A stretch of 64,000 nucleotides of DNA from NCBI RefSeq assembly GCF_036588685.1, contig NC_086383.1:21390001-21454000 (forward strand), given 5' to 3'. Positions 5,547-64,000 of this stretch are shown here, one piece after another (position 1 is the stretch's first letter; the number at the start of each line of letters is the position of its first letter). Under the pieces are notes generated by a model. It worked only from the letters and a program-made list of their open reading frames with translations. It did no database searches and was not told the DNA's origin. This DNA comes from Mytilus trossulus. Lineage: Eukaryota. A program made the position numbers and the translations under genes.

Positions 5547-5789
5547 ATGGCGACATCCCTGTCACCGGACGATATACCGACATCTCTGTCACAGGAAGAT
5601 ATAAATTTTCTACGGTTAGCTGGTTTGTTAATAAGAGTCGCACCACGTGCTGTAAGACGAAGGTTTGACTATGAATTCCATCCAGAACAGCTACAACAAT
5701 TTCTACGCACAAATCGAGACAAGATAGTTACCTTACATACAAAAAGAGGATTATCACAGTGACACAGTATGAATTATTATTTCCAAAAG
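5547..5789 (+). CDS. Copy 1 coding exon 1 (N-terminal part of HEPN domain; frameshift in A-run ~5741-5745)
   Basis: MATSLS...EDINFLRLAGLLIRVAPRAVRRRFDYEFHP matches copy 3 exon 1. Adding one A restores KKRIITVTQYELLFPKG before the GT donor at 5790. Confidence 0.8.
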
Positions 5790-6618
5790 GTAGTCTTCTC
5801 AGATATTTAAGCTACATGTCTAATTAGAACAATCTGCTGATACATCGATTGTTAAAAAACATTCTTTATTTTGACTATCTATGTATTTTAAATTTTTTTT
5901 CCTGTCAAAGAGATCAGCAAAACAAAGCAAAATTATAGAAGAATCTGTGTTAGATCAGTGTATACAGATCGCATTATACAGACACAATATTTGTTTACCT
6001 GCATGATGCCTGCTTTTTGATCCTGGTATCTATGATTATTTTCTATAATATGCTCATTGCATATAGTTACACTTCTTTGTGTATACAAAAATCGATTTTA
6101 CCATTTGAAATATGAGATCTGTATGACTGCACAATTCCATCTCAAGCATTCACTTATGTGTAGAAATAGGGTAATATGAAACGCTGCTGATACACGTAAC
6201 CTAACCTACATGCTATCCTTATGCAGCATAGTGTATAACCAGCTAAGTCTGATAGAAAGTGTTAAAGGATTCCTATACTTCATGTTAGAAAATGTTATAC
6301 TTGCCAAGGATAAGGTCCGTGTTCCAACTTTTTGAAGGGTCTATAACTATTCTGTTTCAAGGCTTGCTATCAGCTTTTACTAGGAATATCTTTTATGAAA
6401 GGTTTTAATTCAAGCAGCAGCCATTCATCCCTGTATATCACATTGTAGAGCTCATTTTGAGTGTTATGACTGGTTACTAGGCTTACACAAACAGTCAATC
6501 AGTTTTCGTTGTAGTGATATAAAATAAACACATTGTCCTCATGTCAATGTGTCATAATCGGGCATTGGGTAATTAAAACGCAGTTATTCAGTTTTCAATA
6601 CTTTCATCTTTGTTTTAG

Positions 6619-6842
6619 GCTCGTCAAAAGTATCATCCGACATGTTTGATTTATCATTGATGGCATGTTTACTCAGACATTTCACAGATTTTGACATCCA
6701 AGATAGTCTTCCACTGGAAACGATCCATACCGATGCTGCTGATATTTCAAGGATAAAATTTTACAGAAACTCCATTGTTCATTCTGACAGCGGTAAAGTT
6801 AATGTAAAGAAGTTTTGGGAAATTTGGAACTGTGTGACTGAG
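6619..6842 (+). CDS. Copy 1 exon 2: HEPN core with Rx4H motif
   Basis: ttttag|GC acceptor, GAG|gtaatt donor. FDLSLMACLLRH...ADISRIKFYRNSIVH...FWEIW resembles the DZIP3-like HEPN pattern. Confidence 0.85.
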
Positions 6843-59405: not shown

Positions 59406-62400
59406 ATGGCAACATTCCTGTCACAAGAAGATATAAATTTTCTACGATTAGCTGGTTTGTTGATAAGAGTCGCACCACGTGCTGTAAGACGAAAGTTTGA
59501 CTTTGAATTCCATCCAGAACAGCTACAACAATTTTTGAGAGAAAAACGAGGCAAGATAGATGACCTAAGACGTAACAAGAGAGTAATTACATTGGCACAG
59601 TATGATTTATTATATCCTAGAGGTAAACGTCTTTATCATTTCAGACTAAGTTGTATATCAGGAAAATCTGCCAAAACATGTATTATGAAAATATATATGT
59701 TACCTTATAAGTATAATAAAATGATTCAATTAAGAAACATATTTTAATATACCTGTGTAACCATATTTTCATTGGACATACTTACACTACTTTATGTATA
59801 AGGAATCAATGTTATTATTTGAAACAACATTTTTCTTTGTTTGCGTCAGTTTTCATTAAAACCTTAACCGTAGACTTAATTGTAGACATATGGTATTTAG
59901 AACTTTTATGATCGGCATAATTATACCTCAGAATAAAATGTGATACGACCTGACCATTTTGTTTTGTAGCATGTTTGAATACCAGCAACGTCTTTTCGTC
60001 ATTTTGAAAATAATTCCTTAACCTCGTATATGAAACGATAACGGAATATTTGACGGGTTTGTGAATGGTCTGACGCAAGGTTTTATTTCTAGTCCCATTC
60101 AAAATTGATGACAGCTTTTAATAAAAATAGAATCTTCATTTCCCACCATTCACCCCTATTGACCACATTGCTGAATATATACATAGTTTGTTGTGATGTT
60201 TATTTGTTCTTTTCATTAGGCTCTACAGGAGTATTATCAGACATGTTTGATGTATCATTAATGGCATGTTTACTCAGACATTTCACAGATCTAGACATCC
60301 AAGAAAGTCTTCCAGTGAAAATAAACCATTCTGTTGCTGCAGATATTTCCAGGATAAAATTTTACAGAAACTCCATTGTTCATTCTGACAGCGGTAAAGT
60401 CGACGAAGACAAGTTCTTGGAGATTTGGAACTGTGTGACTGAGGTAATTTCTCCAATAACTAAATGTAAATAGTAAAAAAATGTAACATTTTACCATCTC
60501 GATGGCTGATGACATTGAAGAGTCTTTAAAATATACATGTTATTAATATATGTAGGTTCTACCACTGCATCAAGTGTGATACTATATTTATCCACTCGAG
60601 AAGTAAAATGTTTAAAATTTAACTGTCTTTAGTGGATAAATATCGTATAACACTAGATTTGGTGGTGAAATTTGTTTCTCTAACAATTTTCAAATCACAA
60701 GCAGGCAAAATTTCTTTCTTTTCGATTGATCAGCAAAAAGATGTGCTCTTTCTACATGACGTCATCAGGCATGGTCGCCTTTTTTCATGCCGTCACGATA
60801 AAAAAAAATAGAAGAATGTAAGAACATTTGACGTCATATCGGATTTTAACCAATGAAGAACTGAGATGAAACGAACCACACGTTGATTATTTTTTTTCAA
60901 TGGGTGCAGACAGGGATAAATTGACGGAGAATTAGAAAAAATATATTTATACACTTGAAAAAGTAAAAATGTGATAGACATACACCTTAAAGTTGTATAG
61001 TTGTTAAAAGAAAATAATCTTAATTTATACCTTTCAGTTTCACAGAGTAACTTCAACAAGTATGAAAATTTATGTTGTTCTGCATTGAAAGCTGTACAAT
61101 TATTCTTTTTTTAATTTGATATATAAGATGATGTCAAAGACATGTGTGTGTTGGGATTAGATGTAGGTTAATTCATTTCAAGTGAAAAATAATTGATAAC
61201 CTCTTGCTTTTGAAAATTATCTAAGGAGTTGTTTATTATCAAGGCAGTGCTTTTTGGTGAAAGTGAAGTTTCATTACTGTAAACCAACTTATTTTCGCGA
61301 CTTTCGCGAGTAGAAAAATAACGCGAATATAAATCGTCGCGAATATGTCAATCTTTGATCTTTCCTAAATAAACTTCATCAAGTTTATCAGATAATCGCG
61401 AAATTAAATAGCCGCGAAGTGGTCAAGAAAGGATACAACGCGAAATAAAGTATCCGCGAAAATAAGTTGGTTTACAGTATTGAATTGATGGTTAACAACA
61501 TGTATTTCTAAAATATCTCACAATTATAACGTACCGTACTGGTCTTTCATTGTAATTATCGTTCATTGAAGCGGTGTCTTTTTGTTGTGGTTATTTTTTT
61601 TGAGATTTCCTGTTCTGTAGCTTTTCAGTAGAACTTGAATATGATGTCTTTGTTGCTTTGTCGTCTACGGAAAGACAGGTGTTTTTTGTTATCGTTGGAG
61701 GATCATGTACCTAACAGTAATATTATTATTTACTCTTTATAATCTTGAATGTGTAACGTTGTATGTTTCATTGTTTACATAAAGTACTATTTTGTGTTAC
61801 AGGCAATACTCAGGCTAGCACCAGAAATGAAGCAAGAGATTGATGCGTTGATAAGTTCATCGTTAACTAATGTCACTGATATCATAGATTGTATACGGCT
61901 TGAGAAACAGTTAAAAAAAACAAATCAGCATATGGTAACAATCAACAAGAAATTAGAGACGCTAGAAATAGAAAAAAATAATATAACAGGTATTTCTGAT
62001 CTATATGGAAAATGTCCCTTTGTGGTCCCTAATTTCTAGCTTGGAAATCAAATTTCCATGGTTATCAACTATCTAAATACATATTTTTATTCCTGCATAA
62101 CTTATCAATAATATTGATAGTGAAATTAAACACAAAGTTATTATTGTTTCTGAAATAATCGTTGGTGTTTTTTTTTACATCACAATTAAACAAATTGATA
62201 GTGTTAAGTAGGGGCATCATATATGTGCCATAGACGCGTTCCTTATATGTTTATTTTTTTTGGAAAAAGGGGTTGAGTTAAATAAATTGGGGAGAGGGGG
62301 GGGGGGGTAAACATCCTTTTTCTCAAAATTTAAGAAATTCAAAAGAAAAGGGGGATGTAAAAAATAATTCTGAAGTCATTTAATTTTTATAAAAGAAAAG

Positions 62401-64000
62401 AAAAATTGGGTTTCACAACGTATTTTGAAAGTTTGGTATATATAGTCTGAAAACTGATTTAATAAGTATTGCGCAACAGCAAGACATCTTTAATTGAAAA
62501 TAAAGTCAAATCTTATATTAAATTTCGTGTTCTTTGACAACATTTATTCTGTGTGAGAAGCCTATCATGTGTAAAAAAATTAAATCAAATCCAGAACTGC
62601 ATCATGCTTGAATATTGTGTTTATTTTTCCCCCAACTGTTCGAGGTTGGACATTTGCTGTCATATCCAGATGCGCTTGACAAAGTAGTTTTAGTATATTC
62701 TGCGTCTTTAGGACAAGGAAGAGTTTAGCTGATTATGAAGCTTTTATTTTAAAAGAGCATTGATTTTATTGAGAGAGGGTATAAGAAAGAAAGAACTGAA
62801 AGTATTTCTATACAAGATTTACGATTGACATCATATCTATTTTGGCAGTATTTCAGTTTCCCATAGCACTAGTGAAAATGTAACTAATTCATAAATCATA
62901 TGTTGTGTGTTTCATTATGAAATGCTTTATCCATTTTTTGTTTTTGAACACCATACTTTTAGTGAGTTCTGAATTATGAAATATGTTTTTGAATAGGAGA
63001 AACTTACCACTTACCATGATTTGAGTTTGTTTCTGGGTTCTGGCAATTAAGTTATTTTGCATCTCCATTTTTGTCTCTTATACCTTGCTACGATTAATCT
63101 TTTATCATTCACTGAAACATGATTGAATACATATCTGTCTATCTAAAACTAATTTTGTTTACAGAAATACAACAACGAACTTTGAAAGAATGGAGAAATA
63201 ATGGCAAAAAATACATTCCTACCTCAGCAACAATGTTTATACTAGAATCATTAAACAAAACGACGGGTGTTATTATTACTGGATCTCCAGGCTGTGGAAA
63301 ATCTGCAGTCGCTCATCATGTAGCATTGGAATTAGAAAAGGAGAAATACGATATAATTCCTTGTGATGATCCTTCAGGAATCATTATGCATTTTACAAAA
63401 GATAAATTCCAAGTTTTTGTAATTGATGACGTTTGTGGTAAATTCTCTCTTAATCAACAAAAAGCAGAAGCATGGGAGCAAAAAGATTGCAAATTAAGTA
63501 TGCTAATTGAGTCTTGTAATCTGAATGACGACGATGACGAAAATGATAGCAAATCAGTGCATAAGTTTATCATTACGTGCAGGGAAAATATATATGTTCA
63601 CGAGACATTCCCAAAACTTACTTGTTTTTCACTTGTACAATGCAGCTTTAGTACCGAATACAAAATTACTCCAGAAGAAAGGAGGACTATTGCAATGTCG
63701 TATGTACCTGAGAATATAGTGAACGACATAGAAAATATTTGTCTGTACGATTTTTTCCCTCTTTTATGTTCTCTGTACTGTACAAACCTTAATCAAGATC
63801 ATAGATTCTTTACCCATCCTGTTGAAATAATTGGAAATGAAATCATAAAAATGAAAAAACAATCTACATCATCTTTTCTCTGTATTTCTCTCCTTGTTCT
63901 TAGAAATAATAAATTTTGTATAGACGAATTAAGATCCGAGGATGTGCAACAGCTAGTTAATGCTATATGCTGGGAATGTAAAATCGAACCTGTATCCATT
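59406..64000 (+). CDS. HEPN-coiled coil-STAND NTPase gene, copy 3; intact so far, runs off the window end. Exons 59406-59622, 60220-60443, 61803-61989, 63165->64000
   Basis: Spliced frame is open: MATFLSQEDINFLRL...RNSIVH (60366-60383)...GSPGCGKS (63281-63304)...FVIDDVCG...IITCREN...FFPLLC. It has no frameshift at the two copy-1 deletion sites it covers. The ankyrin part is inferred to lie beyond 64000. Confidence 0.88.
61277..61477. mobile_element. Tc1/mariner-type MITE in copy 3 intron 2
   Basis: Perfect 23-bp TIR CTGTAAACCAACTTATTTTCGCG; TA target duplication; empty site in copy 1 at 7116-7117. Confidence 0.9.

What the first reader, a model, noticed from the sequence alone, without database searches (positions are those of the whole stretch)
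5547..64000. Tandem family of animal HEPN-RNase / STAND-NTPase / ankyrin-sensor genes: a candidate NLR- or Avs-like immune receptor with a built-in nuclease effector
Seen: splicing four exons gives one protein with an N-terminal HEPN (RNSIVH in copies 1 and 3), a coiled coil, a P-loop domain with the STAND motif series (GSPGCGKS, FVIDDVCG, IITCR, FFPLL as the GxP equivalent, AIHD as MHD-like) and >20 ANK repeats; three paralogs lie in 60 kb. Known: effector-STAND-repeat is the layout of NLRs and of bacterial antiviral STANDs (Avs), and HEPN Rx4H domains are RNases activated by dimerisation, as in RNase L, Ire1 and Cas13. Inference: ligand binding by the ANK array oligomerises the NTPase and switches on RNA cleavage, a one-protein sense-and-destroy defence system in a mollusc. 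The domains are individually catalogued, but I know of no functional description of this combination.
Basis: partly seen in the sequence, partly recalled or inferred. Interest (0 to 1): 0.9.

Follow-up and report, generated by a model that had tools for sequence, protein, structure and literature searches.

The report
Broken mussel HEPN-STAND-ankyrin gene copies
The window holds three tandem copies of a mussel gene family that joins a predicted RNA-cutting HEPN domain, an NLR-like ATPase switch and ankyrin repeats, but all three copies are broken and the family, with hundreds of loci in this genome, is already catalogued in bivalves.

Summary
The domains are real.

No copy encodes one intact protein.
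- Copy 1 has three 1-bp deletions and a TGA stop.
- Copy 2 has no HEPN exons, a TAA stop, a 2-bp deletion and mutated Walker B and sensor-1 residues.
- Copy 3 has a 431-bp out-of-frame deletion 171 bp past the window end. The RefSeq model steps over it with an invented intron.

An intact paralog, 99.3% identical to copy 3, lies 240 kb upstream in a cluster of at least 8 copies. The genome (Mytilus trossulus) has at least 580 HEPN_DZIP3 and 590 nSTAND3 candidate loci.

A predicted NTPase module (pLDDT 93) matches NLRP3, MalT, NLRC4 and Apaf-1 over 300-340 residues. R-N-x3-H is invariant in 37 HEPN-bearing relatives.

The NLR-like, RNase-effector reading is reasonable. It is the published in-silico inference (Anantharaman 2013; Takeuchi 2022), and I found no biochemical test of it. 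This scan has already reported the family elsewhere in this genome.

Verdict: ordinary new members, mostly pseudogenes, of a known kind.

The parts
5547..5789 (+). Copy 1, exon 1 (ATG; N-terminal helices of the HEPN domain), broken by a 1-bp deletion at about 5727
   Evidence: Family HEPN HMM positions 2-62 fall in one frame and 41-75 in another. Alignment to copy 3 and L014 shows CAAGATAG-TTACC against CAAGATAGATGACC.
6620..6842 (+). Copy 1, exon 2: HEPN core with RNSIVH at 6765-6782
   Evidence: PF18738 E 2e-14, 54 bits against a cut-off of 27. Motif position; boundaries.
7352..7538 (+). Copy 1, exon 3: last HEPN helix plus a long helical (coiled-coil-like) linker
   Evidence: Family HMM positions 143-206. 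The model of relative P0040 shows one helix spanning residues 176-231.
8687..12244 (+). Copy 1, exon 4: nSTAND3 NTPase module plus ankyrin array (219-bp tandem unit, 7.8 copies). It is broken by 1-bp deletions at about 9047 and 9942 and by GGA>TGA at 12077-12079.
   Evidence: Three frames (8638-9240, 9042-9968, 9917-12076). nSTAND3 E 8.8e-21 and Ank. Indels; nonsense codon; tandem repeat.
28209..28395 (+). Copy 2, linker exon (equivalent of exon 3). No HEPN exons lie upstream of it.
   Evidence: tblastn and the family HMM on the six-frame translation of the whole window find only this exon for copy 2.
29305..33081 (+). Copy 2, NTPase plus ankyrin exon. It has a TAA at 29778-29780 and a 2-bp deletion at about 31581. 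Walker B reads FVIDNICG and sensor 1 reads IITCS.
   Evidence: The residues changed here (D90, R141) are nearly invariant in 113 relatives.
59406..59622 (+). Copy 3, exon 1 (ATG; N-terminal HEPN helices)
   Evidence: 100% match to residues 1-73 of RefSeq model P0023. HMM positions 1-73.
60221..60443 (+). Copy 3, exon 2: HEPN core with RNSIVH at 60366-60383
   Evidence: PF18738 E 1e-14; motif position.
61802..61989 (+). Copy 3, exon 3: linker helix
63165..64000 (+). Copy 3, exon 4 up to the window end: Walker A at 63281, Walker B at 63416, IITCR at 63569, FFPLL at 63752. It continues in L011. A 431-bp out-of-frame deletion sits at window-equivalent 64171/64172, the open frame stops 9 codons later, and the ankyrin array follows in another frame to 66284.
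   Evidence: nSTAND3 E 1.6e-22. Frames in L011, deletion, translation.

Best explanation
The window holds three tandem members of the Mytilus lineage-specific expansion of HEPN(DZIP3-like)-linker-nSTAND3-ankyrin genes, an NLR-like family with hundreds of loci in this genome. All three copies are decaying.
- Copy 1 is a young pseudogene with four point lesions.
- Copy 2 is an older copy (about 80% identical to copies 1 and 3) that lacks the HEPN exons. It has stop and frameshift lesions and mutated catalytic NTPase residues.
- Copy 3 is a very recent duplicate (99.3% identical, introns included) of an intact gene 240 kb upstream, and has lost 431 bp at the end of the NTPase module.

For intact family members the most likely mechanism is inferred, not shown. 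The ankyrin array holds the STAND module in an ADP-bound closed state. Binding of a pathogen-derived or danger ligand releases it. Nucleotide exchange drives oligomerisation, the N-terminal HEPN domains are brought into dimers, and the R-N-x3-H sites then cleave RNA, giving an abortive or antiviral response.

The cluster evolves by segmental duplication, by unequal crossing-over within the 219-bp ankyrin DNA repeats, and by frequent pseudogenisation, as is typical of birth-and-death immune gene families.
For: Domains: (the spliced RefSeq model P0023 gives HEPN_DZIP3 E 1e-25 over model positions 1-137 of 144).

Lesions. None of the small indels lies in a homopolymer, and copy 1 carries four independent lesions.

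Intact paralog L014: exons 1-3 are present and exon 4 is an open 1784-codon frame.

Cluster and family size:
- At least 8 copies lie on C11 between 21.15 and 21.46 Mb, with two more clusters elsewhere on C11.
- 582 HEPN_DZIP3 and 595 nSTAND3 first-look candidates.
- 975 cluster representatives at 50% identity with E<=0.001; every named one looked up is Mytilus.

STAND fold: the AF2 model has pLDDT 93.3 and pTM 0.88. NLRP3 (Z 13.4, 314 residues), MalT (13.3, 311), NLRC4 (13.2, 303), SAMD9, NOD2 and Apaf-1 align over model residues 1-400. Classical AAA+ proteins align only over 1-220.

HEPN:
- R125, R130, N131 and H135 are invariant in 37 members down to 23% identity.
- The best structural neighbours are Csm6 (Z 7.8), AbiF (6.8), Swt1, an archaeal HEPN protein, sacsin HEPN and Cas13a.

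Variable N-terminus: of 55 diverse relatives, 52 carry ANK, 16 carry HEPN and 1 carries CARD.

Ankyrin arrays are DNA-level tandem repeats.

The same reading is published in silico: PMC3710099, PMC9646362, PMC10236652.
Against:
- The lesions rest on one assembly without read support. RefSeq annotates copy 3 as protein-coding.
- No RNase, ATPase or oligomerisation data exist for any member.
- The HEPN homodimer prediction gave no verdict.
- Structural Z scores for the HEPN domain (below 8) are in the range where helical bundles can match by chance.
- The nSTAND3 Pfam model is unspecific in six-frame searches: it rings in 14 of 14 control prokaryote genomes.
Confidence: 0.72

Rival explanations
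1. The copies are functional genes. The lesions would be assembly or haplotype artefacts, or would be bypassed by splicing. For example, copy 3 could make the 1055-aa RefSeq protein (HEPN, linker, half an NTPase, ankyrins), or a truncated sensor-less HEPN-NOD protein of about 550 aa.
For: RefSeq model P0023 joins 63556 to 64140 through a canonical GT-AG pair. Copy 3 differs from an intact gene by only 0.7%. The M. edulis counterpart of copy 1 (P0009) appears to read through the 9047 site.
Against: The invented intron removes sensor 1, the helical domain and the winged-helix domain of a module that is conserved end to end in more than 500 relatives. Copy 1 has four independent lesions and copy 2 has at least four plus loss of the HEPN exons. 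None of the indels is in a homopolymer.
Confidence: 0.15
2. The HEPN domain of this family is not a nuclease. It would act as an RNA-binding or homotypic adaptor module, and the proteins would signal through partners as Death/CARD-type NLRs do.
For: DZIP3 itself is known as an RNA-binding ubiquitin ligase (my own knowledge). Some relatives carry CARD or no recognisable N-terminal domain at the same position. The dimer prediction gave no verdict.
Against: R-N-x3-H, the catalytic signature of active HEPN RNases, is invariant across 37 divergent members. Inactive HEPN families usually lose it (PMC3710099, Table 1).
Confidence: 0.15
3. The family does not sense pathogens. It would serve another conflict, such as restraining retroelement RNA or self/non-self recognition (mussels suffer transmissible neoplasia).
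For: The loci are embedded in transposon-rich DNA: reverse-transcriptase fragments at 39161-39797 and inverted repeat copies. Anti-transposon roles are proposed in PMC3710099 and PMC9646362.
Against: There is no direct evidence either way. The layout is equally compatible with any ligand.
Confidence: 0.12

Closest known systems
Bivalve and cnidarian DZIP3/hRUL138-like HEPN NLR-like proteins (PMC3710099 Table 1; Pinctada fucata arrays, PMC9646362; corals, PMC10236652)
   Same: N-terminal DZIP3-like HEPN with a conserved Rx4H motif (Asn after Arg), a central STAND NTPase and C-terminal repeats. They also share tandem arrays, large lineage-specific expansion and copy-number variation.
   Different: The NTPase here is the nSTAND3 clade. 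NACHT scores only 17.9 bits against a cut-off of 26.7, and on the P-loop only. The repeats are ankyrin rather than LRR, TPR or WD40. A dedicated helical-linker exon sits between the HEPN and the NTPase.
Bacterial Avs5 / AVAST type 5 (SIR2-nSTAND3-TPR; bioRxiv 10.1101/2025.07.08.663546; PDB 9jap, 9nc9)
   Same: Effector-STAND-repeat layout. The NTPase is assigned to the same Pfam family, PF20720. The P-loop part of the mussel model aligns to both structures (Z 6.1-6.2, 17-21% identity over about 95 residues).
   Different: The effector is SIR2 (NAD+ hydrolase), not HEPN, and the repeats are TPR, Sel1 or PPR. No PADLOC Avs model matches; the best PADLOC hit is candidate system PDC-S73 (E 1e-14 to 5e-17). 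No evidence of direct descent.
RNase L and Ire1 (KEN-type HEPN)
   Same: A HEPN RNase switched on by ligand-driven dimerisation or oligomerisation. RNase L also uses ankyrin repeats as its sensor.
   Different: The domain order is reversed (ANK-pseudokinase-KEN), the switch is a kinase-like module and not a STAND NTPase, and the HEPN belongs to a different family.
Other loci of the same family in this genome, reported earlier by this scan (s1-829907, s1-823536)
   Same: The same HEPN-nSTAND3-ankyrin genes, including clusters in which some copies are broken.
   Different: A different chromosomal place. All three copies here are broken, and copy 3 is a 99.3% duplicate of an intact gene.

Membership tests
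HEPN superfamily, DZIP3/hRUL138-like family (PF18738) | Profile match above the curated cut-off | tested here: met
   Exon 2 alone: 54 and 55 bits against a cut-off of 27. Spliced RefSeq model P0023: E 1e-25, model positions 1-137 of 144. Copy 2: no match.
HEPN superfamily, DZIP3/hRUL138-like family (PF18738) | Rx4-6H motif with a polar residue after Arg | tested here: met
   RNSIVH in copies 1 and 3. R130, N131 and H135 are invariant in 37 members.
HEPN superfamily, DZIP3/hRUL138-like family (PF18738) | All-helical HEPN fold | tested here: inconclusive
   The model of relative P0040 has pLDDT above 90 over residues 20-170. Foldseek finds nothing significant. VIA-align ranks Csm6 first (Z 7.8) and AbiF second (6.8), with Swt1, an archaeal HEPN protein, sacsin HEPN and Cas13a further down. 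All Z values are below 8.
HEPN superfamily, DZIP3/hRUL138-like family (PF18738) | Metal-independent RNase activity on dimerisation | not testable with these tools
   The complex prediction homodimer run gave no verdict. A biochemical assay is needed.
STAND NTPases (nSTAND3, PF20720) | Profile match above the cut-off | tested here: met
   71-82 bits against a cut-off of 27.2. Caveat: the model also rings in 14 of 14 control prokaryote genomes.
STAND NTPases (nSTAND3, PF20720) | Walker A, Walker B (hhhhDD) and sensor-1 Arg | tested here: met
   Copies 1 and 3 have GSPGCGKS, FVIDDVCG and IITCR. G44, G46, K47, D89, D90 and R141 are at least 90% conserved in 113 relatives. Copy 2 fails, with DN and S at these positions.
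STAND NTPases (nSTAND3, PF20720) | NBD-helical-winged helix (NOD) module followed by repeats | tested here: met
   The pLDDT 93 model aligns with NLRP3, MalT, NLRC4, NLRP9, NOD2, Apaf-1 and SAMD9 over 300-340 residues spanning positions 1-400 (Z 12-13.4). Ankyrin repeats follow directly. A conserved IHD with H306 sits at the MHD-like position.
STAND NTPases (nSTAND3, PF20720) | Nucleotide-dependent oligomerisation | not testable with these tools
   Not attempted; it needs biochemistry or cryo-EM.
NLR in the strict sense (NACHT or NB-ARC plus LRR) | NACHT or NB-ARC profile match and LRR sensor | tested here: not met
   NACHT scores 17.5-17.9 bits, below the cut-off of 26.7, and only over the P-loop. 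No LRR is present; ankyrin repeats take that place.
Bacterial Avs (AVAST) families | Match to an Avs protein model | tested here: not met
   A PADLOC scan of the NTPase module and of two relatives lists no Avs model at E<=1. The best hit is PDC-S73.

The most novel reading that the evidence does not exclude
The broken copies may not be inert. Copy 3 could give a sensor-less HEPN-NOD product of about 550 aa that acts as a helper, decoy or dominant regulator of intact paralogs. The pseudogenes' 219-bp ankyrin repeat arrays could also serve as donors for gene conversion or unequal crossing-over that diversifies the sensor arrays of the intact genes in the cluster. That would be a germline diversification reservoir for an RNase-armed receptor family.
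Probability: 0.07. Interest if true: 0.6.

Novelty: new member of a known kind. Interest (0 to 1): 0.25.

Why it matters
Animal STAND receptors that carry a nuclease as a built-in effector have been predicted since 2013, but I found no report of one being tested. The family is a fair candidate for showing that metazoan NLR-like proteins can act directly, as bacterial Avs proteins do, rather than through adaptors.

This window adds little to that question. Its three copies are decayed members of a family already catalogued in bivalves and corals, and already met several times in this scan. Its practical value has three parts:
- It points to an intact, nearly identical paralog (L014, C11:21208674-21218474) as an experimental candidate.
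- It shows a RefSeq model (P0023) that hides a deletion behind an invented intron.
- It illustrates the birth-and-death dynamics of the cluster.

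Tried and rejected
That contig carries HEPN, linker, NTPase and ANK in one open frame (P0044). Its best match in this genome is only 39% identical, so it comes from another organism and says nothing about these loci.
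- HEPN homodimer: complex prediction on residues 12-175 of P0040, two copies, scored 0.19 and 0.21 against a mark of 0.32. The verdict was 'no answer' and the run is not used as evidence either way.
- Foldseek against the PDB with the N-terminal model found nothing at E<=0.001.
- phmmer of the NTPase module against PDB sequences found only P-loop-level hits.
- Looking for another N-terminal effector exon for copy 2: Pfam on ten open frames, seven of them between copies 1 and 2, found nothing.
- Homopolymer sequencing error as the cause of the frameshifts: rejected on sequence context.
- Small introns as the cause of the frame changes: rejected, because homology to the other copies runs straight through each site and differs by 1, 2 or 431 bases.
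Exons were searched by reference, and the database's own spliced model P0023 was used instead.

Full report
**What is in the window**

The window is G000:C11:21390001-21454000 of a 1.30-Gb assembly. RefSeq names on the same 71,253,669-nt contig identify the organism as Mytilus trossulus. The window has no N runs.

Stop-to-stop open frames on the + strand fall into three groups. Searched exon by exon, by reference, against Pfam, they give:

| Feature | Copy 1 | Copy 2 | Copy 3 |
|---|---|---|---|
| HEPN_DZIP3 on exon 2 | E 2e-14 | none | E 1e-14 |
| nSTAND3 at the start of the large exon | E 8.8e-21 | E 8.5e-20 | E 1.6e-22 |
| Ankyrin array | Ank_2 E 2.8e-160 | Ank_2 E 3.2e-70 and 1.8e-116 (two open frames) | runs off the window |

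The domain content and the 'three paralogs in 60 kb' are therefore real.

**Gene structure**

The RefSeq protein P0023 ('ankyrin repeat domain-containing protein 17-like', 1055 aa) is the model for copy 3. It maps at 100% to 59406-59624, then to exon 2 (about 60221-60443), exon 3 (about 61802-61989) and exon 4 from 63165.
- As a spliced protein it scores HEPN_DZIP3 E 1e-25 over model positions 1-137 of 144. The HEPN domain is therefore spread over exons 1-3.
- Exon 3 also encodes a long helix, residues 176-231 in the AF2 model of relative P0040.

**None of the three copies is intact**

Copy 1:
- The large exon is read in three frames.
- Alignment with copies 2 and 3 shows single-base deletions at about 9047 and 9942. 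Neither lies in a homopolymer.
- There is a further 1-bp deletion in exon 1 at about 5727.
- GGA>TGA at 12077-12079 sits 54 codons before the ancestral stop.

Copy 2:
- It has the linker exon (28209-28395) but no HEPN exons. Neither tblastn nor a family-specific HMM run on the six-frame translation of the whole window finds any. No other domain is detectable upstream.
- It carries CAA>TAA at 29778-29780 and a 2-bp deletion at about 31581.
- It has lost two nearly invariant NTPase residues. Walker B reads FVIDNICG and sensor 1 reads IITCS (compared).

Copy 3:
- It continues beyond the window (locus L011). At window-equivalent 64171/64172 it lacks 431 bp that are present in copies 1 and 2 and in the intact paralog.
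- The frame then shifts and stops nine codons later. The ankyrin array follows in another frame.
- The RefSeq model hides this by splicing 63556 to 64140. That removes sensor 1 and the helical and winged-helix parts of the NTPase module.

**Context**

The 5' part of copy 3 has near-identical matches at C11:21153665 and 21212574, and further copies lie at 21281276, 21307070 and 21349522. With the three window copies this makes a cluster of at least 8 over about 300 kb. Two more clusters lie at 9.2-9.3 Mb and 10.86-10.90 Mb.
- The copy at 21208674-21218474 (L014) has all three upstream exons and an uninterrupted 1784-codon exon 4.
- Copy 3 is 99.3% identical to L014, introns included, right up to the deletion.
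- Within the local cluster most copies are interrupted.

Genome-wide, the first-look candidates number 582 for HEPN_DZIP3 and 595 for nSTAND3, often a few kb apart.

A phmmer scan with the 403-aa NTPase module of L014 against 1.84 billion representatives found 975 clusters at E<=0.001 and 586 at E<=1e-10. Most of the best 150 matches cover nearly the whole module at 25-35% identity. Every named representative I looked up is from a Mytilus species; an oyster (Saccostrea) relative appears at 28% identity.

Of 55 diverse relatives, all carry nSTAND3, 52 carry ankyrin repeats, 16 carry HEPN_DZIP3 and one carries CARD. The constant core is therefore nSTAND3-ANK, with a variable N-terminal module, as in NLRs.

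**Tests of family membership**

NTPase module. The L014 module was folded with a 56-sequence alignment and gave pLDDT 93.3 and pTM 0.88.
- Foldseek's top rows mix STAND proteins (ZAR1, NRC3, Apaf-1, CED-4, NLRPs, NLRC4, Avs4, EfAvs5) with ORC/Cdc6-type AAA+ proteins.
- On re-alignment, NLRP3 (Z 13.4), MalT (13.3), NLRC4 (13.2), NLRP9, SAMD9, NOD2 and Apaf-1 align over 300-340 residues spanning model positions 1-400. Proteasomal and p97-type AAA+ proteins align only to 1-220.
- That is the STAND NOD arrangement.
- A conserved IHD (H306, at least 90% conserved) sits where NB-ARC proteins have MHD.

HEPN domain.
- R125, R130, N131 and H135 are invariant in 37 HEPN-bearing members, some only 23-38% identical.
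- The AF2 model is confident.
- Structural neighbours are led by Csm6 (Z 7.8) and AbiF (6.8), and include Swt1, an archaeal HEPN protein, sacsin HEPN and Cas13a. These Z values are modest, and Foldseek finds nothing significant.

Not a member of:
- NLR in the strict sense. NACHT is below its cut-off and there are no LRRs.
- Any Avs family in PADLOC. No Avs model matches, and the best hit is candidate system PDC-S73.

The Pfam family nSTAND3 is shared with bacterial Avs5 (bioRxiv 10.1101/2025.07.08.663546). The nSTAND3 model is, however, unspecific in six-frame searches.

**What is already known**

- Table 1 of Anantharaman et al. [quoted passage not shown] For another animal HEPN family (CXorf38) fused to NACHT and Death domains, it proposes RNase L-like degradation of cellular or viral RNA.
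- Takeuchi et al. 2022 (PMC9646362) describe tandem, haplotype-variable arrays of HEPN and NACHT genes in a pearl oyster. More than 50 are HEPN-NACHT proteins 'overrepresented in the bivalve lineage', and 194 of 202 HEPN proteins keep the Rx4-6H motif. They interpret them as NLR-like sensors.
- Corals and Aplysia are reported likewise.
- UniProt already names Mytilus members 'DZIP3-like HEPN domain-containing protein' and 'Novel STAND NTPase 3 domain-containing protein'.
- Six full-text searches found no biochemical or genetic test of any member.
- Earlier notes of this scan report the same family elsewhere in this genome, with the same conclusion.

**Mechanism**

Shown here: the architecture, the conservation of the catalytic-type residues, the STAND fold, the expansion and the decay.

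Inferred: the ankyrin array senses a ligand, the NOD module oligomerises, the HEPN domains pair up, and RNA is cleaved.

A homodimer prediction for the HEPN domain gave no verdict and is not used.

As assembled, the three window copies cannot carry out this mechanism. At most, copy 3 could give a truncated protein without a sensor.

**What could not be done**

Expression, splice junctions and read support for the lesions are untested.
- A single-ORF Logan contig that encodes HEPN through ANK (P0044) hints at spliced transcripts in a related organism, but its origin could not be checked.

**Verdict**

The locus consists of new, mostly dead, members of a known kind.

Noticed in passing
window 17899-19271: A 49-bp satellite, 27.9 copies at 92% identity, lies between copies 1 and 2.
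   Followed up: no
window 10350-12063 and 31042-32927: The ankyrin arrays are DNA-level tandem repeats of 219 bp (73 aa, two ankyrin units plus a short insert). There are 7.8 copies at 86% identity in copy 1 and 8.7 copies at 71% in copy 2. Paralogs differ by 105-bp and 213-bp indels, and the intact paralog L014 has about twice as many units. This suggests unequal crossing-over.
   Followed up: partly
window 46353-46595 and 48437-48745; also L012 about 5031-5273 and 7157-7390: Two exons of an F5/8 type C (discoidin, NedA-like galactose-binding) domain gene lie downstream of copy 2, and again downstream of copy 3 (PF22633 E 2.5e-8 on 46296-46607). One database gene model (P0001) fuses such exons onto a HEPN-STAND-ANK gene, which is probably a chimeric prediction.
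   Followed up: partly
window 39161-39412 and 39519-39797: Reverse-transcriptase (RVT_1) fragments in two frames: a decayed retroelement. Unannotated open frames lie just upstream at 37255-38367.
   Followed up: no
window 20097-20765 vs 41536-42240, and 26781-27279 vs 38468-38968: Inverted repeat pairs at 85% and 89% identity, probably copies of mobile elements. The open frames tested in them have no Pfam match.
   Followed up: partly
window 63557-64139 (RefSeq model P0023): The RefSeq protein for copy 3 uses a GT-AG 'intron' inside the NTPase-coding exon to step over a 431-bp frameshifting deletion. This looks like an annotation workaround rather than a real intron, but it was not tested with reads.
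   Followed up: partly
P0040 (Mytilus edulis CAG2256748.1): A 327-aa M. edulis protein closely resembling copy 1 ends just after Walker B through a frame change at a different site. Truncated or broken alleles of this gene therefore also occur in a sister species' assembly.
   Followed up: no
The genome search control panel: The Pfam nSTAND3 model rings in 14 of 14 control prokaryote genomes, and over the cut-off in 7. A bare nSTAND3 hit in a six-frame search is therefore weak evidence of STAND membership.
   Followed up: no
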